Positions 4,058 through 62,521 of a stretch of 64,000 bases of DNA are shown in pieces. The stretch's first letter is position 1. The number at the start of each line of letters is the position of its first letter. The stretch spans positions 62,001 through 126,000 of the IMG/VR virus record IMGVR_UViG_3300005613_000002; one strand, given 5' to 3'. A model generated the notes under the pieces. That model had not been told where the DNA came from. It did not search any database and saw only the letters and a program-made list of their open reading frames with translations. Both the position numbers and the translations under genes were made by a program.

Positions 4058-7000
4058 TTAATTTATTAATTTGTTTAATTTTTCTTTTTCAGTTGCCAAT
4101 ATACCTTTCATATAACTTTCTTGTTTATTTGCAACATCAGATGGTAATTTATACATACCTTCAGAACTAAAATTAGAGTTAGCATAATAATTAAATGATA
4201 CAGCATTTTGAAGTGCATCGATAGGTCCTTTCAACGATTGACCACCCATTACTTTCATACTTAATGTAACATTTGCCATCATTGGCTGCATTCCAAATCC
4301 TTCTGGATTCATATCCCAAGGACTATCAACATAATCAATATTTAAACTTTCAATAATTACTTTTGTATAAAAGAAATCACCAACTCTTAAAATACAAATT
4401 GGTTGACGACCAAAAACTGAATTTTTTGCTCTTGTAATATTATTATCATCAACTTGCACATCATATCTTAATGCAGCACCTTGTCTCATACATTGCTGTA
4501 AGAATGTTAACCTTTTATGAAAATCTTCAGGAGTTTGTGAATGAAATGCTGGATAAAAATTATTTTTATTAATTGAGCTAAAACCATTTAATATTGCACT
4601 TTCATCAGCAGTTCTTTCATTCATTAAACAATCCGAAGCATTATTTTTTTGTTTATTTTTCTCATTTTCTAATCCAACAATTTCATTATTGATATCATCA
4701 ATAGTTTTTTGTTCATCAGCAGTTAATGTTTTTGAAATATTATCAACTGATTTATCATTTCTAACTATTTTTATTTCTGAATATCTATCTTGTTTAGCTG
4801 ATTTAAGAGCAATTCCACTTACTGTAGCACCATCATCACTAGCTTTAGTACTACCTAAACTTTCTGTTGTAATTTCAACACCCATTTGATCTGGTGTTTT
4901 TCCAAATAATGCTAAAATTTTTCTTTCAATAAAATTCTTTGCAGCATCTGCCCTTCTTTGTCCTAATAATTCATTATATTCTGAGGTATATAATTTTGAT
5001 GCTGACCCAATAATTTCAATTTTATAATATTCTCTATCTTCTTCGTTTTCGAAAAATCTTTTTAATTCAGAAATTAAAGGAACTGTATTACCAAAAAAAT
5101 CAGTTTCAAAAACAGAAGTATATTGTGAATATGAATATGGTTTTGAAACTTCATAATAAGTCTTCCCACTAACATTTACAGTATTTAAATCACCAATATA
5201 AAATATATCTTTATTTAATCCATAATGAGTTAAATCAGTAGTTGTAATAATTTCAGGATGAATATCATATGAATTATCATACATAGTATCAATAATTGAA
5301 CTTAAATTATCACTTACTTTAGGTACATCATTTGGAAAATATATAGTAAATGTTTTAGAATTCTTATTTAAATTTGGTTGAATTGATTTATTATCGCCAA
5401 TAATTAATTCTTTCTTATTTTCAAGTTCTTTTATTTTTGCCTCTTGATTAGTTTGTGGTGTAATATTGGTCAATTTATCACCACCAAAAGCAAAGAATTC
5501 TGCAATATCTTTATGTGATGTTTTACTATCTTTATAATTTTTTACATGTGGTGGATAATCAATTAATAATGAAAAATTAAGCACAGCACTTCTTTCAGAA
5601 TTTTGATAATTATACATCGGCTCACCTCTACCAACCATAACTGTTGATTCAAATTTAGCATTAGTTGTTTCATTAATTTCTAATGCGTATGGTGGAAACC
5701 ACATTATACGTCCATTGAAAGGACCTACTTCACACACAGGAATTGGTGACCCAAATTCATCATCAATTATACCAACTCCATCTTTACTAATAACTCTAAC
5801 TGCAAGATTTTCAAGACTAAACATTAAATCTTTATTATTAATGTTTCCTTCTTTATCTAATATTGGGTGTATTCTAGGTAAAACTGAATCATATATTACA
5901 GAATTTTCATTTCCACCATATACTTTATTCCCATTAAATCTTATTGTTTTCGTAAATTTATCATATTGGTCAATTGCTGAATGTTGACGAGTACCTCTAA
6001 CACTGGTATTATCACTAGAATCAGCATATGTACTATCATTAGATTTAAATAAACCTGAACCATTAAAACCTGCAATCTTATCACCTTTCATAAAGGCTTT
6101 TCTTGTCATATCAACAATTTCACCCTGAGAAGCAATAACTAAATTTCTAGTATACTCTAATAAACCAGTTTTAACATTAAAATCTGTCTCAAATTTTGAT
6201 TCATCTACAGTAAATCCCTGATAATTATCACCCCTATATTGTGCACCTACATTATTAGTAATATCATCAATTCCATCTCTACCCCAAACAATTTTATTTT
6301 CATTATTATTTAAGTTTCCTCTAAATTCAGTTTCATCACCAATCCAATCATTTTGTCCAAATACCGAAGTATATGTATAATCTTTTTTTAATGGATTACC
6401 CATCCAATCAATAGCATCATCATTTGGTGCATAATCACCATTACTATAATCTGCTGAATTAAACATGTTTTGATTAGCTACATCATTAGAATATTCAGAA
6501 TTATTTAAATATTGAACAATAAACGATTTATATGGATAAAATCTATTATTGTTAAAATCAAAAAATTTCTTATTGTTTGATAATAATATATTTTTAGTTC
6601 CTTGTATTGATGTTTCTGCTTCATCAGCCTTATCATAATAAACAACATTATAAGCATCATTATTAGGTCTAAATCTATTATTATTTATTGATGTAAATAA
6701 AAATTTTAATTGACCAGTACCTGTATTATTTAAAAAATCATTATTATCTGCATCCTTAGTAAACGGATAATTTTTATTTGGGTAAAAACCAGTTACACTA
6801 TCAATAAAATTACTAAAACCTGTTTTATCTTCTTTTTTAGTAATATTATAATTAATTCTTTTAGTAAATAATTTAGTGTCTTTATTTCCATCAAACAAAT
6901 TAGACACATTCATTATTGGTAAATAATCTTGAGCAACACTTGAACCAGCGTTCATAGCAAATTGTCTACCTAACATCACTAAACCAATTTCACTTAATGG

Positions 7001-7703: not shown

Positions 7704-10181
7704 TTATGTACCTGTTCCATAACCAATTTTAGCATCAACTTGTCTTTGTATTGCTGTTACTGGACGATATATTTTTTGCATAAATTTTTCACCATCAATA
7801 TTTAATGTAATATCACTAACTACTGCTACATTACTATCAGCAAATTCAACTTTTAATGGTTTTTTCAAAATATTTGCTAAGTCAGCTAACATTCCACCAC
7901 CTTTTGTATTTACTTTTGATATTGATTCGACAGCATTTTGTATTGCGATATAATCTTCTTTATTTCCAGTTAATACTGTGCTAATATTTTTAAATGCATT
8001 ACCAACTCTTGAAATTGCATCAGCATTTTTTGATATTGTTTTCATTGTTGCAGCAAATGTTAATAATCCTAATGCACCAACTGTAAATCCCATCATTGAA
8101 GCAGCTAACATTCCAACTCCTGCTCCTACTTTTATCATTGATTCACCAGCACCATTACTTTTTTCAATTAAATTTCCTAAACCTTCAGCCATTTGACCAA
8201 TTCCCCATGCAGCAATTCCAATACCAGCACCAACACCTAAAGCAGCAGCACCAAAAGCTAACATTGCTGGTGCAGCAGCAGTACCTGCCGTAGCAAACGC
8301 AAACATTGCAGGTACTAAAATTGCAACCATAGTACCACCAAGAATACCAATAGTACCATTCATCATTTTTAGTTTATCTACATCAACATCTTTAATTGCT
8401 TTTGCTAATTCACTAATACCTGCTGATGCTACACCAATACCAGCACCCACTCCAACGGCAGCAGCACCAACACCTAATCCACCTTTCATCATACCTGCAC
8501 CTCTACCAGCAGCTAATTTTCCCCTACCAGCCATTTGTGAACCAGATAAAGCAGAACCTCGACTTCCAATTCCACCAGTCAATTTATTTGCAGCACCTGA
8601 TGTTAAATTTCCAAATCCTTTTAATACAGTTTTCCATGCTAAAGCACCAGCTAATAATATACCACCAGCAGTAGCAACACCACCCCAACCACTTCCAGCA
8701 AGAGTTGACATCCAATCAGCAATAGGTCTTACCCATTCTAATGTTTTATTAACACCTCTTAATAATGGTAATAATGCACCTTTTAATGCATTTATTGTAT
8801 TTTTGAATACTTCATCAAATGTTTGTGCTTCTTTTGCTCTTTGTTGTAATGTTGTTTGTTCTTTCTGAAAAGCATTTGCTTGTTCACTAGTTAATTTACT
8901 AATATCTGTCATATGACCAGCAAGCATAACTTGGAATTTACCAGTTTTAGAATCCATCGTGGCAGCACCTTTAAGTAATTCCTTTTCACGCTTAGTTAAT
9001 CCTCTACCAGCTAATTGATTATCCATTATAGATAAATCAAGTCTTCTTTGTGCAATTTCAAACATTTCTTCTTTAGCAATACCTAAAGAATTTGCAACAT
9101 TTGATAATCTATCAACATCAGCAGGACTTATAAATTTTTCGAAGGTTGTTTTACCATCAGGACTTATTATTTTCCTTAAAGTATAAACTCCTTTAGTCAT
9201 ATTTGATATTTGTTCTGTAACCTTTTCTGGTTCATTACGAACCATATATAACCAACGGAGTGGGTCCATTTTTGCAAAATTACCACCCATTACTTGTAAA
9301 TTAGCACCTAATTCAATTACTTTTTCTAATCCTCTTGTTGCTTCAGCTACATTAAGAGCAGTTTCCATACTAACTCTAGTTTTTTCAGCATCTATAGCCA
9401 TAGTACTGAATGCTTTAACACCGTTAATAAATGTAAATGTTGATAATTTTTTGAAGTTTTTATTAATATTTGAAAGAATTTTAGTTGTATTAAGACCCAT
9501 AAGTTCAGATGTTTCTACAACACCTTGAACAAAATTCATAGTTCTTCTAACATCAATTCCCATATATTCAAATTGTGCAGCTAATTTTGTTGCTTGTTCA
9601 ACACCTAAACCAGTACCTCTACCAATAGTAGTTATATCTATCAGAGTTTCAGCCACTAAAGCACGTGCTCTGCCAGTTTCATCAGCAAAACCTTGTTGCA
9701 TTGTTCGAATATCTTCTAATGAACCACCTAAACTTGAAACGATTCCAACCGATTGTTCGAATGATTGTCTCATTAAATCAGCTTTTGCTCCCGACATTCC
9801 TAAATTAAGGATTGTTGATTTAATAATTTTATCTGAAGCTAATAAATAATCTAAACCAAGTTTAAATTGTCCAACAGTGAATTTTAATATACCTAATAAT
9901 TGTTGTCTAGTTCTAACCTCTTTTGAAACTTCAGAATTAACATTTCGTTGTTCATTTACAATTTTAGTTAATTCTTCTTTTTCTTGAGCAGTTAATGATG
10001 ATGCTTGTTTTCTTGATTCTAATACTAGTCTTTCTTGTTCAGTTTGGACTCTTTTTTGATTTGCAATATATTCTTCTTGAATTTTTATTCTATCATTAAA
10101 ATCAATAGCAGTATTTAATTGATTATTATAATCAACCTGTAAATCCCTCAATTGTTTTAAAAATTCTAATTTATCTGCCAT
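7704..10181 (-). CDS. Tape measure protein
   Basis: 825 aa; helical/coiled N-terminus; A/G-rich hydrophobic C-terminal half; lies between chaperone-like and baseplate genes. Confidence 0.8.
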   Translation of the reverse strand: MADKLEFLKQLRDLQVDYNNQLNTAIDFNDRIKIQEEYIANQKRVQTEQERLVLESRKQASSLTAQEKEELTKIVNEQRNVNSEVSKEVRTRQQLLGILKFTVGQFKLGLDYLLASDKIIKSTILNLGMSGAKADLMRQSFEQSVGIVSSLGGSLEDIRTMQQGFADETGRARALVAETLIDITTIGRGTGLGVEQATKLAAQFEYMGIDVRRTMNFVQGVVETSELMGLNTTKILSNINKNFKKLSTFTFINGVKAFSTMAIDAEKTRVSMETALNVAEATRGLEKVIELGANLQVMGGNFAKMDPLRWLYMVRNEPEKVTEQISNMTKGVYTLRKIISPDGKTTFEKFISPADVDRLSNVANSLGIAKEEMFEIAQRRLDLSIMDNQLAGRGLTKREKELLKGAATMDSKTGKFQVMLAGHMTDISKLTSEQANAFQKEQTTLQQRAKEAQTFDEVFKNTINALKGALLPLLRGVNKTLEWVRPIADWMSTLAGSGWGGVATAGGILLAGALAWKTVLKGFGNLTSGAANKLTGGIGSRGSALSGSQMAGRGKLAAGRGAGMMKGGLGVGAAAVGVGAGIGVASAGISELAKAIKDVDVDKLKMMNGTIGILGGTMVAILVPAMFAFATAGTAAAPAMLAFGAAALGVGAGIGIAAWGIGQMAEGLGNLIEKSNGAGESMIKVGAGVGMLAASMMGFTVGALGLLTFAATMKTISKNADAISRVGNAFKNISTVLTGNKEDYIAIQNAVESISKVNTKGGGMLADLANILKKPLKVEFADSNVAVVSDITLNIDGEKFMQKIYRPVTAIQRQVDAKIGYGTGT

Positions 10182-60520: not shown

Positions 60521-60556
60521 AAAAAGTTCCATTCTATTTAGAGTGGAACTTTTTTT
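60521..60556 (+). terminator. Attenuator terminator upstream of the first tRNA
   Basis: AAAAAGTTCCATTCT-ATTT-AGAGTGGAACTTTTTTT; its 5' arm can alternatively pair with GAATGGG at 60464-60470. Confidence 0.85.
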
Positions 60557-60563
60557 GTTATAT

Positions 60564-60658
60564 CTGGGATTGAACGAGTGGTTGAAGTTACCAGCCTTGG
60601 AAACTGGTGAGGGCGATAAGATGGTTGTCCTCCGTGGGTTCGAACCCCACATCCCAGA
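60564..60658 (+). tRNA. tRNA-Pro(UGG) on a Ser-like class II scaffold
   Basis: Acceptor CTGGGAT/ATCCCAG, A73; anticodon arm CCAGC-CTTGGAA-ACTGG; 8-bp variable stem; T arm GTGGG-TTCGAAC-CCCAC. Confidence 0.8.
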
Positions 60659-60660
60659 CA

Positions 60661-60803
60661 AATGAATAATGGTAGTGTTAATATTATATATGGAGTAACT
60701 TGATGAATCCTTGAAGGAACGCTTGGTGAAAAATAGTAAAAGTATATAACAACAACACGCTAGTCGAAGATGACTGGAGTTATAGGCGAAAATCCTATTC
60801 ATT
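60661..60803 (+). ncRNA. tRNA-like structured ncRNA 1
   Basis: End pairing AATGA/TCATT; ATAATGGTA D-loop-like segment; long helix GTGTT..TTATATA/TATATAA..AACAC; hairpin CTAGTC/GACTGG; T-arm-like ATAGG-CGAAAAT-CCTAT. Confidence 0.55.
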
Positions 60804-60815
60804 GTTTATAAATAT

Positions 60816-60901
60816 GGTGATTGTTGCAGAGTGGTCAAATGCGCCAGATTGTGGTTCTGGTATCCGAAAGGATTTCGTGGGTTCGAAACCCATCATTCAC
60901 C
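60816..60901 (+). tRNA. tRNA-His(GUG) on a Tyr-like class II scaffold
   Basis: G-1:C73; anticodon arm CCAGA-TTGTGGT-TCTGG; variable arm ATCC-GAAA-GGAT. Confidence 0.85.
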
Positions 60902-60908
60902 CAAAAAT

Positions 60909-61021
60909 AATTAGTTACCCTGCTTGTTCCGTATGGGGTTATAAAAATACATCAATTAACGGAACTCATGATGGAGTCCTTGCCAAGAAAGTAGGATAAA
61001 GATGTTAGATATTAACTAATT
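60909..61021 (+). ncRNA. Structured ncRNA 2, possibly pseudoknotted
   Basis: Closing stem AATTAGTTA/TAACTAATT; GTTCCGT/ACGGAAC; TCCT/AGGA hairpin; loop ACATC can pair with GATGT. Confidence 0.5.
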
Positions 61022-61030
61022 TATAAATAT

Positions 61031-61105
61031 CGGGTAGTTATGCAGATGGCTATACAACGATGCCTTGGACGCATCGGTTCGCAGGTTCGAATCCTGCCTA
61101 TCCGA
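61031..61105 (+). tRNA. tRNA-Pro(UGG), atypical D arm, A37
   Basis: CGGGTAG/CTATCCG, A73; CGATGC-CTTGGAC-GCATCG; GCAGG-TTCGAAT-CCTGC. Confidence 0.75.
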
Positions 61106-61113
61106 CATAATAT

Positions 61114-61186
61114 AGAGTAGTAGCGCAGTTGGTAGCGTACTGCATTTGGGATGCAGGGGTCGCAGGTTCAAGTCCTGTCTACTCTA
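61114..61186 (+). tRNA. tRNA-Pro(UGG), class I, G37
   Basis: AGAGTAG/CTACTCT, A73; CTGCA-TTTGGGA-TGCAG; canonical D and T arms. Confidence 0.88.
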
Positions 61187-61188
61187 CT

Positions 61189-61260
61189 GTGTTAGTAGCA
61201 TAACTGGCTAATGCGCCACACTGTGAATGTGGAGAATAGGGTTCGAGTCCCTCTAACACC
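61189..61260 (+). tRNA. tRNA-His(GUG), class I, A37, 4-bp T stem
   Basis: GTGTTAG/CTAACAC, C73; CCACA-CTGTGAA-TGTGG; AGGG-TTCGAGT-CCCT. Confidence 0.8.
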
Positions 61261-61266
61261 CAACTT

Positions 61267-61350
61267 AGTCCTATGGTGGAATTGGTAAACACATCGTCCT
61301 TTGAAGGCGACACCCGAAAGGGTTTGTAGGTTCGAGTCCTACTAGGATTG
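61267..61350 (+). tRNA. tRNA-Gln(UUG) on a Leu-like class II scaffold
   Basis: AGTCCTA/TAGGATT, G73; D arm GTGGAATTGGTAAACAC; TCGTC-CTTTGAA-GGCGA; variable arm ACCC-GAAA-GGGT. Confidence 0.85.
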
Positions 61351-61383
61351 CAAAAGTGTGAAAAACATACTTTATTAAGACGA

Positions 61384-61471
61384 AAGAAGATTCAGAGATG
61401 GTTGACATTCATGTAACCAATAGCTCGATAATGGTAGGGTTATAGTGAAAAGTGATAATAATCTTCTTCCA
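61384..61471 (+). ncRNA. Structured ncRNA 3 ending in CCA
   Basis: Closing stem AAGAAGATT/AATCTTCTT + CCA; hairpin TGGTT-G-ACAT/ATGT-AACCA; ATAATGGTAG shared with ncRNA 1. Confidence 0.5.
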
Positions 61472-61505
61472 ATATGAAGTACAAGTATTGGATAGTCTTT
61501 TTTAT

Positions 61506-61580
61506 TGCCCATTGGTGTAATTGGCTAACACATCTGATTTTGATTCAGAAGACTTATAGGTTCGAATCCTATATGGGCAA
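61506..61580 (+). tRNA. tRNA-Gln(UUG), class I, A37
   Basis: TGCCCAT/ATGGGCA; TCTGA-TTTTGAT-TCAGA; ATAGG-TTCGAAT-CCTAT. Confidence 0.9.
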
Positions 61581-61633
61581 CTTTTCTCTTGCTACTTATT
61601 ATTTTTTTAATTATATTTATGAAAAATATAATT

Positions 61634-62122: not shown

Positions 62123-62521
62123 ATGAAATATAATTTATTCTTAGATGATGTTAGAAACCCGATTGATTGTGTATACTACATGTATACACCAATATATACT
62201 AGTGTTGACTGGGTGATAGTTAGAGATTATAATTCTTTTATTAAAATAATTAAAGAAAATGGTTTACCTGAAATAATCTCCTTCGATCATGATTTATCTG
62301 ATGAACATTATGACCCAAAAATGTATCATGAATCATATGATGAATTATATGATTCATTTAAAGAAAAAACTGGTTACGAATGTGCTAAATGGTTGGTAGA
62401 TTATTGTATTGATAATAATGAATTTCTACCAAAAAAAATATTAGTACATTCAATGAATCCTATTGGTAGACGAAATATTGAGTCTTATTTCGAATCATAT
62501 AATAAATCATTAAAATTATAG
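62123..62521 (+). CDS. Cyclic-phosphate-processing receiver (cREC)-domain protein
   Basis: LFLDD.R.P, ISFDHDL, KTGYECAKWL and VHSMNP.G motifs. Confidence 0.75.
   Translation: MKYNLFLDDVRNPIDCVYYMYTPIYTSVDWVIVRDYNSFIKIIKENGLPEIISFDHDLSDEHYDPKMYHESYDELYDSFKEKTGYECAKWLVDYCIDNNEFLPKKILVHSMNPIGRRNIESYFESYNKSLKL

What the first reader, a model, noticed from the sequence alone, without database searches (positions are those of the whole stretch)
60564..60658. Ser-bodied tRNA(UGG) could be a mistranslating tRNA (Ser at Pro codons)
Established: SerRS recognises mainly the long variable arm and ignores the anticodon. Seen: this first gene of the array has an 8-bp V stem in Ser orientation, a C31-A39 mismatch and A37. 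Inference: if serylated it would relieve stalls at CCN codons by inserting Ser. C1-G72 and A73 argue for Pro charging instead, so the question is open.
Basis: inference. Interest (0 to 1): 0.65.

Follow-up and report, generated by a model that had tools for sequence, protein, structure and literature searches.

The report
Serine-shaped proline tRNA of jumbo phages
This is a real, conserved phage tRNA that descends from a serine tRNA and kept its long extra arm, but its amino-acid-accepting end has been rebuilt to look like a proline tRNA. It therefore most likely inserts proline correctly rather than serine, and it is one of several such rebuilt tRNAs in large phages.

Summary
Window 60564-60658 (+) is a 95-nt tRNA(UGG) with C1-G72, A73, C31xA39, A37 and an 8-9-bp variable (V) stem (ARAGORN; Rfam 46.7 bits).

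**Serine origin.** The body is serine-like. Against an annotated phage tRNA-Ser(UGA) it has the same D loop, V-arm geometry and T arm, and the anticodon loop differs only at A36->G36.

**A conserved family.**
- About 30 distinct homologues occur in phage-like tRNA arrays. None was found as a tRNA in 185,579 species genomes with the same pattern.
- All five helices covary: 99% of cells are paired and 23 of 27 pairs show double changes.
- The proline acceptor set is fixed: A73 in 27/27 and C1-G72 in 26/27.
- The serine acceptor set (G1-C72, G2-C71, G73) is gone, and pair 2-71 drifts freely.

**Not alone.** The same complete 321-kb T4-like phage has long-armed His, Gln, Trp and Cys tRNAs. Each carries acceptor features matching its own anticodon.

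**Codon check.** In the phage's ribonucleotide reductase, 32 of 35 CCN codons sit in proline-majority columns.

**Verdict.** This is a serine-derived tRNA whose identity has most likely switched to proline. Serine mistranslation is unlikely but not biochemically excluded. Why the arm is kept is unknown. The island also carries tRNA-repair genes, which hints at a counter-defence role.

The parts
60564..60658 (+). Pro-L: class II-shaped tRNA(UGG), positions 1 to 73; no CCA encoded (the following bases are CAA)
   Evidence: ARAGORN; Rfam tRNA 46.7 bits; family alignment A2 and pair counts
60564..60570 (+). acceptor stem, 5' strand (C1 to U7)
   Evidence: Pairs with 60651-60657. All 7 pairs covary in the family. 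Pair 1-72 is C-G in 26/27
60573..60589 (+). class II-type D arm: 3-bp stem and 11-nt loop GAGTGGTTGAA
   Evidence: Loop identical to that of phage S-RSM4 tRNA-Ser(UGA). Bracket structure
60591..60607 (+). anticodon arm: anticodon TGG at 60598-60600, A37 at 60601, C31 (60595) opposite A39 (60603)
   Evidence: Variation at 31-39 across the family
60609..60632 (+). long variable arm: 8-9-bp stem with a 6-8-nt loop, flanked by U (60608) and the invariant C48 (60633)
   Evidence: Fold. The 7 conserved pairs are 100% paired and 5 covary
60634..60650 (+). T arm (GTGGG TTCGAAC CCCAC)
60651..60658 (+). acceptor stem, 3' strand, plus discriminator A73 (60658)
   Evidence: A73 is invariant in 27/27 distinct homologues
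60816..60901 (+). His-L: class II-shaped tRNA(GUG) with encoded G-1 (60816) and C73 (60901); V arm is a 4-bp stem with a GAAA loop and a UUC tail
   Evidence: Homologous 86-nt tRNA-His in Microbacterium phage Cece, with V-stem covariation
61031..61105 (+). short tRNA-Pro(UGG) with C1-G72, A73, A37 and a weak D stem
   Evidence: (34.4 bits)
61114..61186 (+). short canonical-loop tRNA-Pro(UGG) with G37 and A73; here pair 1-72 is A-U
   Evidence: (67.8 bits)
61189..61261 (+). short tRNA-His(GUG)
61267..61350 (+). Gln-L: class II-shaped tRNA(UUG) with a leucine-like D arm; V arm is a 4-bp stem with a GAAA loop
   Evidence: D arm 94% identical to the phage's Leu(UAA). Annotated genes under its best GenBank phage matches are tRNA-Leu; several matches are unannotated. 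11 distinct homologues
61506..61580 (+). short tRNA-Gln(UUG)
60521..60554 (+). terminator-like hairpin with a T run, ending 10 nt before Pro-L
62123..62521 (+). 132-aa protein with a cyclic-phosphate-processing receiver domain (cREC_REC), just downstream of the array; context only
   Evidence: Pfam PF20274, E 1.2e-23; phrog_1479

Best explanation
The gene encodes a working elongator tRNA of a T4-like jumbo phage. It descends from a tRNA-Ser(UGA) through an A36-to-G36 anticodon change.

The lineage kept the class II body: the D arm, the long variable arm and the T arm. Its acceptor end was remodelled to the bacterial proline identity set, C1-G72 and A73, which joins G35, G36 and the G15-C48 pair.

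**Inferred mechanism**
- It is transcribed with the array and trimmed by RNase P and RNase Z.
- It receives CCA from the phage or host CCA-adding enzyme.
- It is charged with proline by the host ProRS.
- It reads CCA and CCU, which make up 95% of the phage's proline codons.

**The long arm**
The arm is an inherited structure kept under selection. Its purpose is unknown. My working guess is that it gives the phage a proline tRNA whose shape differs from host tRNA-Pro, and so a spare that host tRNA-directed nucleases or modifiers may not recognise.

**Shown versus inferred**
- Shown: the gene, its fold, its conservation, its serine ancestry and its acceptor-end remodelling.
- Inferred: proline charging, use in translation and any defence-related role.
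For: **Real tRNA under selection**
- Rfam match at 46.7 bits.
- 27 distinct homologues with 99% paired cells, and 23/27 pairs with compensatory changes.
- Three more divergent members and one found without constraining the anticodon all have UGG, C1-G72 and A73.
- Pro-L is at least as conserved as the neighbouring canonical tRNA-Pro: 0.80 versus 0.69 mean pairwise identity across 38 contigs. About 0.75 remains after discounting the 18 bases fixed by the search pattern.

**Serine ancestry**.

**Proline identity**
- A73 in 27/27, C1-G72 in 26/27, C48 invariant and G15 invariant.
- These match the determinants listed by Giege and Eriani 2023 (PMC9976931).

**Loss of serine acceptor marks**
- No G1-C72 and no G73. 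G2-C71 occurs in only 4/27.
- The phage's own two tRNA-Ser genes keep G1-C72 and G2-C71.

**Same logic in sister tRNAs**
- His-L has G-1:C73, Cys-L has U73, and Trp-L has A1-U72 with G73.
- The Gln-L family has U1-A72 or A1-U72 with G2-C71. It carries A73, which LeuRS needs, in only 1 of 11.
- Trp and Cys exist in this phage only as long-armed forms, yet the set covers all 20 amino acids.

**Codons**
- 32 of 35 CCN codons of the phage ribonucleotide reductase lie in Pro-majority columns of 106 homologues. 25 lie in columns at least 90% Pro, and none in Ser-majority columns.
- CCA is 66% and CCT 29% of Pro codons.

**Supporting genes**
- The phage has a CCA-adding enzyme and no class IIa synthetase of its own.
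Against: - No charging, expression or proteomic data exist, and no RNA runs hold the locus.
- E. coli SerRS is reported to recognise tRNA-Ser mainly by tertiary shape, and G73 is dispensable in vitro. A serine-shaped body with the wrong acceptor end could therefore still be serylated at some rate.
- A37 replaces the G37 (m1G37) that tRNA-Pro normally carries and that aids prolylation in E. coli.
- It is not known whether ProRS tolerates a 26-nt variable region.
- The host, and therefore its ProRS type, is unknown.
- The D loop and anticodon loop were fixed by my search patterns, so their conservation is not independent evidence.
- The codon test excludes reassignment, not low-level mistranslation.
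Confidence: 0.7

Rival explanations
1. Mistranslating or dual-identity tRNA. SerRS still charges the serine-shaped body, so serine goes in at some CCN codons. This could be a selected way to diversify or tune phage or host proteins, or a tolerated side reaction.
For: The body is serine-like, with a V arm laid out as in tRNA-Ser. SerRS ignores the anticodon and relies on the variable arm and overall shape. Engineered tRNA-Ser(UGG) does mistranslate in yeast (PMC6827378). Natural precedents exist for class II tRNAs with foreign anticodons: allo-tRNAs (PMC5389517) and nev-tRNAs (PMC3333845).
Against: In those precedents the acceptor end keeps the identity of the body (G73 or U73 for Ser, A73 for Leu). 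Here it has been swapped to C1-G72 and A73 and held there in 26-27 of 27 lineages, while G2-C71 is free to drift. That is the pattern expected for selection by ProRS, not SerRS. The His, Cys, Trp and Gln analogues carry the acceptor marks expected for their own anticodons. CCN codons sit at invariant prolines of an essential enzyme. Two other tRNA-Pro(UGG) genes stand beside it, so any serine insertion would be stochastic across the proteome.
Confidence: 0.12
2. Decoy or non-translating RNA. The long-armed tRNAs are not used on the ribosome. They soak up host factors that recognise variable arms, such as Septu or retron nucleases that cut the tRNA-Tyr variable loop, or MenT/AbiEii-type nucleotidyltransferases that select tRNA-Ser by its long loop.
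For: Variable arms are known contact or cleavage sites for such systems (PMC13096335; PMC11162799). The tRNA island carries an Rnl1-type RNA ligase, a small kinase and a cREC domain protein, which points to conflict over tRNA integrity. Some irregular tRNAs are charged but not used in translation (PMC5389517).
Against: A decoy would not need a fixed proline acceptor end. It would also not need a standard anticodon loop with UGG that matches the phage's preferred codon, intact tertiary-pair positions (U8, A14, G15, G18, G19, C48, TTCGAA), or 7/5 geometry. Trp and Cys are represented only by long-armed forms in an otherwise complete 20-amino-acid set.
Confidence: 0.08
3. Decaying duplicate. A tRNA-Ser copy picked up an anticodon mutation and is drifting without function.
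For: Phage tRNA arrays hold many odd copies. One neighbouring short tRNA-Pro scores only 34 bits.
Against: 27 or more distinct sequences from different environments keep every helix by compensatory change. They also keep A73 and C1-G72, and are more conserved than the canonical neighbour.
Confidence: 0.03

Closest known systems
Bacterial and phage tRNA-Ser(UGA), for example the annotated tRNA-Ser of cyanophage S-RSM4
   Same: Class II architecture. Identical D loop GAGTGGTTGAA. The V arm starts GAGG, ends CCTC and has one unpaired base on each side. Same T arm. The anticodon loop differs at one base.
   Different: Anticodon UGG instead of UGA. Acceptor stem with C1-G72, a variable 2-71 pair and A73, instead of G1-C72, G2-C71 and G73. 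V stem lengthened to 7-9 bp with a conserved loop.
Canonical bacterial tRNA-Pro(UGG)
   Same: Anticodon UGG, C1-G72, A73, G15-C48 and 7/5 acceptor/T geometry.
   Different: Long variable arm and class II D arm instead of a 4-5-nt variable loop. A37 instead of G37.
allo-tRNAs (Mukai et al. 2017, PMC5389517)
   Same: Long-armed bacterial tRNAs that carry anticodons for amino acids other than Ser, Leu or Tyr.
   Different: allo-tRNAs have 8/4 or 9/3 acceptor/T branches and G73 or U73, and are taken to be serylated. Pro-L is 7/5 with A73 and C1-G72.
Nematode nev-tRNAs (Hamashima et al. 2012, PMC3333845; 2015, PMC4300185)
   Same: Class II tRNAs with class I anticodons (Gly, Ile).
   Different: nev-tRNAs are leucylated in vitro, so their body identity wins. 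In Pro-L the acceptor end matches the anticodon, not the body.
Engineered tRNA-Ser(UGG) mistranslators (Berg et al. 2019, PMC6827378)
   Same: A serine tRNA body with a proline anticodon: the state Pro-L's ancestor probably passed through.
   Different: The engineered tRNAs keep the serine acceptor stem and are serylated. The natural family has replaced it.
Alloacceptor tRNA remolding (mitochondria, PMC4783518; anticodon shifts in eukaryotes, PMC3923123)
   Same: A duplicated tRNA changes its anticodon and ends up closer in sequence to another acceptor family than to its own.
   Different: The known cases are mostly within class I or in reduced mitochondrial tRNAs. Here a class II scaffold was converted to a class I amino acid, in phages, with the long arm retained.
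Phage tRNAs that escape tRNA-targeting defences (PMC10264068, PMC11555353, PMC13096335)
   Same: Phage-encoded duplicates of host isoacceptors that differ in the anticodon loop or variable loop, next to tRNA repair genes.
   Different: Those cases involve small loop changes with shown resistance. For Pro-L, resistance to any nuclease is untested.

Membership tests
tRNA (Rfam RF00005) | Cloverleaf with a score above the gathering threshold | tested here: met
   46.7 bits against a threshold of 29, full-length match 1-71; ARAGORN call
Bacterial tRNA-Pro (ProRS substrate) | Anticodon G35 G36 | tested here: met
   UGG at 60598-60600. UGG in every family member, including one found without constraining the anticodon
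Bacterial tRNA-Pro (ProRS substrate) | A73 and C1-G72 | tested here: met
   A73 in 27/27 and C1-G72 in 26/27; determinants as listed in PMC9976931
Bacterial tRNA-Pro (ProRS substrate) | G15-C48 Levitt pair | tested here: met
   G15 and the single base between the V stem and T stem (C, column 70 of A2) are invariant
Bacterial tRNA-Pro (ProRS substrate) | G37 (m1G37) and a short class I variable loop | tested here: not met
   A37, and a 26-nt variable region. The short neighbour at 61114 has G37
Bacterial tRNA-Pro (ProRS substrate) | Charged with proline by ProRS | not testable with these tools
   Needs an aminoacylation assay
Bacterial tRNA-Ser (SerRS substrate) | Long variable arm with serine-type layout and a class II D arm | tested here: met
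   Alignment with an annotated tRNA-Ser(UGA); the annotated genes under the two near-full-length GenBank phage matches, and most under the partial ones, are tRNA-Ser
Bacterial tRNA-Ser (SerRS substrate) | G1-C72 and G2-C71 (conserved in most bacterial tRNA-Ser) and G73 | tested here: not met
   C1-G72 in 26/27; pair 2-71 is AU 13, UA 9, GC 4, GU 1; A73 in 27/27
allo-tRNA | 8/4 or 9/3 acceptor/T branch with G73 or U73 | tested here: not met
   7-bp acceptor and 5-bp T stem, A73
Mischarging class II tRNA (nev-tRNA type) | Class II body with a class I anticodon | tested here: met
Mischarging class II tRNA (nev-tRNA type) | Acceptor end keeps the identity of the body's amino acid | tested here: not met
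   The acceptor end is proline-type, not serine-type
Alloacceptor-remolded tRNA | Closer in sequence to another acceptor family than to its own, with an anticodon one mutation away | tested here: met
   The most complete matches are tRNA-Ser genes, none is a tRNA-Pro; UGA to UGG is one change. The short tRNA-Pro genes of the same phage do not align outside the T arm

The most novel reading that the evidence does not exclude
Large phages systematically rebuild class II tRNA scaffolds (Ser, Leu, Tyr) into acceptors for class I amino acids. The pattern is Ser to Pro or Thr, Leu to Gln or Met, and Tyr to His, Asn, Cys or Asp. The odd-shaped copies are kept beside normal ones as a 'body swap': they decode the same codons, but host tRNA-directed nucleases or modifiers aimed at the normal isoacceptor do not recognise them. 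Pro-L would then be one member of a counter-defence tRNA set rather than a simple spare.
Probability: 0.25. Interest if true: 0.8.

Novelty: new variant of a known kind. Interest (0 to 1): 0.6.

Why it matters
If the reading is right, this is a natural, completed identity switch across the two structural classes of tRNA. A serine scaffold now serves proline, with the intermediate 'mistranslator' state left behind.

It raises several testable points:
- ProRS would have to accept a 26-nt variable arm. By extension, HisRS, GlnRS or GluRS, TrpRS and CysRS would have to accept long arms too. This can be checked with transcripts.
- The family offers ready-made, evolution-tested scaffolds for tRNA engineering.
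- Phage tRNA arrays look like places where the pairing of tRNA body and amino acid is unusually fluid.
- The neighbouring RNA-repair genes and the known defence systems that read variable loops make a counter-defence role worth testing.

An 86-nt tRNA-His of the same kind exists in a cultured phage, Microbacterium phage Cece. Part of the phenomenon can therefore be studied at the bench now.

Tried and rejected
- **RNA evidence.** The look-up of sequencing runs returned only two DNA runs with 5-7% of the words and no RNA run. I therefore did not use read laying, and expression is untested.
- **Phage synthetase or V-arm binder.** The genome has no class IIa synthetase core. The only Seryl_tRNA_N signal is 14.7 bits, below the cut-off, inside a 512-aa ORF next to the capsid gene. 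I take it to be coiled-coil noise.
- **Host inference.** The Bacteroidota promoter motif is not enriched: 3 found against 1.3 expected. The T4 late motif TATAAATA is not enriched: 30 against 25.6. Cluster look-ups gave no names. The closest cultured capsids are only 33-40% identical, from Flavobacterium and Microcystis phages and two huge phages. The host remains unknown.
- **Promoter for the array.** The sigma-70 scan was not above the shuffled controls.
- **Four-base-pair anticodon stem 'superwobble' (PMC13092985).** It concerns the top pair 27-43, not 31-39, and has no phage or tRNA-Pro content. I dropped it as an explanation for C31xA39.
- **Stop-codon recoding.** The coding fraction barely changes if TAG or TGA is read as sense: 0.709 against 0.719 and 0.717. 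I used the standard code throughout.
- **E. coli genomes.** No BLAST match to Pro-L.
- **Literature.** Eight searches found no description of class II-shaped Pro, Gln or His tRNAs in phages. The library lacks most subscription journals, so this is not proof of novelty.
- **Pattern hits that are not tRNAs.** 17 of 18 genome hits and about 34 of 75 metagenome hits were chance matches in other sequence.

Full report
**What is there**

ARAGORN finds seven tRNA genes at window 60564-61581, all on the + strand: Pro(UGG) 96 nt, His(GUG) 86 nt, Pro(UGG) 76 nt, Pro(UGG) 74 nt, His(GUG) 73 nt, Gln(UUG) 85 nt and Gln(UUG) 76 nt. Rfam's tRNA model matches all seven above its gathering score. The gene in question scores 46.7 bits at 60564-60658.

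Read from the sequence, it has the following features:
- acceptor stem CTGGGAT/ATCCCAG, so C1-G72, and discriminator A73;
- a 3-bp D stem with the 11-nt loop GAGTGGTTGAA;
- anticodon loop CTTGGAA, so UGG, A37 and A38;
- C31 opposite A39;
- a 26-nt variable region with an 8-9-bp stem, flanked by one unpaired base on each side;
- a standard T arm.

**It is not alone in the array or the genome**

His at 60816-60901 and Gln at 61267-61350 also have class II shape. Each has a 3-bp D stem, an 11-nt D loop and a 4-bp variable stem closed by GAAA.

The window is part of a single 321,624-bp, 27.5% GC contig with direct terminal repeats, rated complete. It encodes T4-type capsid, portal, terminase and sheath proteins. 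It is a T4-like jumbo phage.

The genome has 46 tRNA genes by ARAGORN, two more by Infernal, and a tmRNA. Outside the window there are further long-armed tRNAs with class I anticodons: Trp(CCA), Cys(GCA), Asn(GUU) and Met(CAU). The set covers all 20 amino acids. Trp and Cys are present only as long-armed forms.

**Pro-L is a conserved phage family**

I searched for the D loop plus the anticodon loop, with nine free bases between them.
- The pattern found the tRNA in 4-5 IMG/VR contigs and about 41 metagenome contigs. All of these are tRNA-rich, phage-like arrays.
- It found the tRNA in none of the 185,579 species genomes. The 18 genome hits there are chance matches, plus one odd serine-like tRNA.
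- Looser patterns added three more divergent members and one member found without constraining the anticodon.
- Related arrays are syntenic: Pro, Pro-L, His, Pro, His, Gln(CUG), Gln-L, Gln, then Asp, Glu, Val and so on.

On the alignment of 27 distinct sequences (A2) the cloverleaf with the variable stem is 99% paired. 23 of 27 pairs show changes on both sides, against 11.7 in shuffles and 3-10 when the partners are slid. The seven-pair variable stem is 100% paired, with five covarying pairs.

Pro-L is at least as conserved as the canonical tRNA-Pro next to it. It is therefore a selected, folded tRNA, not a decaying copy.

**The body comes from tRNA-Ser(UGA)**

Among 50,697 GenBank phage records, every annotated gene under the two near-full-length matches to Pro-L, and most under the partial ones, is a tRNA-Ser. 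None is a tRNA-Pro.

Aligned with the annotated tRNA-Ser(UGA) of cyanophage S-RSM4:
- the D loop is identical;
- the anticodon loop differs only at position 36 (CTTGAAA against CTTGGAA);
- the variable arm starts GAGG and ends CCTC, with the same single flanking bases;
- the T arm is the same.

The differences are the acceptor stem, the discriminator and a longer variable stem.

**The acceptor end has been switched**

Giege and Eriani (PMC9976931) give the relevant identity sets.
- For bacterial proline identity they list G72, A73, G35, G36 and the G15-C48 pair. A73 is strictly conserved in bacterial tRNA-Pro, and C1-G72 is a strong determinant in E. coli.
- For serine, G1-C72 and G2-C71 are conserved in most bacterial tRNA-Ser. 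G73 acts in vivo, and the variable arm and overall shape are the main signal.

In the Pro-L family A73 is present in 27/27 and C1-G72 in 26/27. G15 and C48 are invariant. Pair 2-71 is free: AU 13, UA 9, GC 4, GU 1. No member found by any pattern combines the UGG anticodon with a serine-type acceptor end. The phage's own two tRNA-Ser genes do keep G1-C72 and G2-C71.

This is the pattern expected if ProRS, not SerRS, is the enzyme under selection.

**The sister tRNAs tell the same story**

Each long-armed tRNA has an anticodon one mutation away from a class II anticodon:
- UGG and UGU from Ser UGA;
- UUG from Leu UAG, and CAU from Leu CAA;
- GUG, GUU, GCA and GUC from Tyr GUA.

Bodies match their proposed sources, and acceptor ends match the anticodons:
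- Gln-L's D arm is 94% identical to the phage's Leu(UAA). The annotated genes under its best GenBank phage matches are tRNA-Leu.
- Cys-L's anticodon arm equals that of a phage tRNA-Tyr except for the middle anticodon base.
- His-L has an encoded G-1 and C73. Cys-L has U73. Trp-L has A1-U72 and G73.
- The 11 distinct Gln-L sequences have U1-A72 or A1-U72 with G2-C71, like the short Gln genes. Only one has the A73 that LeuRS needs.

The phenomenon reaches beyond this clade.
- A 634-kb metagenomic phage (LR745206.1) has Gln-L between two short Gln genes.
- Cultured Microbacterium phage Cece has an annotated 86-nt tRNA-His with G-1, C73 and a covarying GAAA-capped variable stem, and a 90-nt tRNA-Met.
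- Cece also shows the reverse case: a 73-nt tRNA-Tyr and 75-nt tRNA-Leu genes.

**Codon-level check**

In the phage's ribonucleotide reductase large subunit, aligned with 106 homologues, 32 of 35 CCN codons fall in columns where proline is the majority. 25 fall in columns at least 90% proline, and none in serine-majority columns. The codons read by the other long-armed tRNAs behave in the same orthodox way.

CCA and CCT are 95% of proline codons genome-wide, matching a UGG anticodon.

This rules out reassignment. It also makes substantial serine insertion costly, but it cannot exclude a low rate.

**Context**

The phage has no class IIa synthetase of its own, so charging depends on the host. 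It does encode a CCA-adding enzyme, which fits the absence of an encoded CCA.

The tRNA island also holds a T4 gp63-type RNA ligase 1, a small P-loop kinase and, 540 nt downstream of this array, a cyclic-phosphate-processing receiver (cREC) domain protein. This is the kit phages use against anticodon nucleases.

Defence systems are known to read or cut variable loops:
- retron-Eco7 and Septu cut the tRNA-Tyr variable loop, and T5's variant loop resists (PMC13096335);
- MenT3 selects tRNA-Ser by its long loop (PMC11162799).

These facts make a conflict-related reason for odd-shaped spare tRNAs plausible. Nothing here tests it.

**Verdict**

The interpretation as a present-day Ser-at-Pro mistranslator is unlikely.

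The most economical reading is an alloacceptor remolding that has run to completion:
1. a serine tRNA changed its anticodon;
2. it probably passed through a mistranslating state;
3. it was rescued by acquiring the proline acceptor end;
4. it has since been maintained in a clade of jumbo phages.

My estimates are about 0.7 that it is mainly prolylated and used in translation, about 0.12 for meaningful serylation, and less than 0.1 each for a decoy role or no function.

**What remains unexplained**
- why class II scaffolds are reused so often;
- why the Pro-L variable stem is longer than in tRNA-Ser, with a conserved loop;
- why A37 is kept;
- why each long-armed gene in this window is followed by a 128-157-nt spacer, while short genes are 1-7 nt apart.

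**Limits**
- No expression or charging data exist, and the host is unknown.
- The D loop and anticodon loop were fixed by the search patterns.
- The absence from bacterial genomes holds only for the exact pattern used.
- The literature check is limited to the held library.

Noticed in passing
window 60816-60901 and 61267-61350: Two more class II-shaped tRNAs in the same array. His(GUG) has an encoded G-1 and C73. Gln(UUG) has a leucine-like D arm. Both have a 4-bp variable stem closed by GAAA, and each has a normal-length twin nearby.
   Followed up: partly
L002:4867-4949 (Trp), L003:2751-2833 (Cys), L003:3847-3930 (Asn), L001:837-924 minus strand (Met); same genome, outside the window: Further long-armed tRNAs with class I anticodons. 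Trp-L (A1-U72, G73) and Cys-L (U73) are the only Trp and Cys tRNAs of the phage. Asn-L has two U-U mismatches in its acceptor stem. Met-L has an unpaired 1-72 position.
   Followed up: partly
L002:11366-11450 and L003:4144-4271 (same genome): Two tRNA-like genes seen by Infernal but not by ARAGORN. One has a 20-nt anticodon loop (possible intron or insertion). The other is an Ile(GAU)-like gene with a roughly 58-nt hairpin inserted in the variable region.
   Followed up: no
L002:1554-1628 (same genome); L041:9362-9438 and 9746-9820; Microbacterium phage Cece L262:6066-6138, 6446-6520: The reverse mismatch: class I-sized (73-77 nt) tRNAs carrying Leu or Tyr anticodons in phage arrays.
   Followed up: no
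L262:4770-4855 and 4901-4990 (Microbacterium phage Cece, OP068343.1): A cultured phage carries an annotated 86-nt tRNA-His and a 90-nt tRNA-Met. The His gene aligns with the window's His-L, with a compensated variable stem. This gives a possible bench system.
   Followed up: partly
L260:1500-1581 (uncultured 634-kb phage LR745206.1): An 82-nt Gln(UUG) with a long arm sits between two short Gln(UUG) genes, the same layout as in the window's clade.
   Followed up: partly
window 62123-62521; L002:9768-10856; L003:4487-4912; G000:C1:14425-14811 (minus strand): RNA-repair and tRNA-maturation genes in or near the tRNA island: a cREC cyclic-phosphate domain protein, a T4 gp63-type RNA ligase 1, a small P-loop kinase and a CCA-adding enzyme.
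   Followed up: partly
window 60659-60816, 60902-61031, 61351-61506: Each long-armed tRNA is followed by a 128-157-nt spacer. Spacers 1 and 3 share short motifs (ATAATGGTAG.GTTA). Spacers 1 and 2 both end TTTATAAATAT immediately before the next tRNA. No Rfam family matches them.
   Followed up: partly
L003:15544-15616 and L002:6007-6369 (same genome): A high-scoring tRNA with a CUA (amber) anticodon, and a tmRNA. TAG still ends 20 of 250 long ORFs, and reading TAG as sense barely raises the coding fraction, so there is no sign of recoding.
   Followed up: partly
L002:15835-17133 (same genome): A TnpB/Cas12f-like (IS605 OrfB) gene inside the tRNA island, next to the ribonucleotide reductase gene. 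A GIY-YIG SegE-like endonuclease lies at L003:5888-6523.
   Followed up: no
L053:2117-2210 (Pseudoxanthomonas sp. NC8 chromosome, CP060419.1): A serine-type tRNA (G1-C72, G2-C71, G73, CCA) that ARAGORN reads with an 8-nt anticodon loop, CTTGGAAA. It may be a tRNA-Ser(GGA) with one extra loop base.
   Followed up: no
window 61031-61105: The second short tRNA-Pro(UGG) has A37, a mismatched D stem and only 34.4 bits. Relatives also carry a short A37 form beside the canonical G37 form, so position 37 of tRNA-Pro is diversified in this clade.
   Followed up: partly
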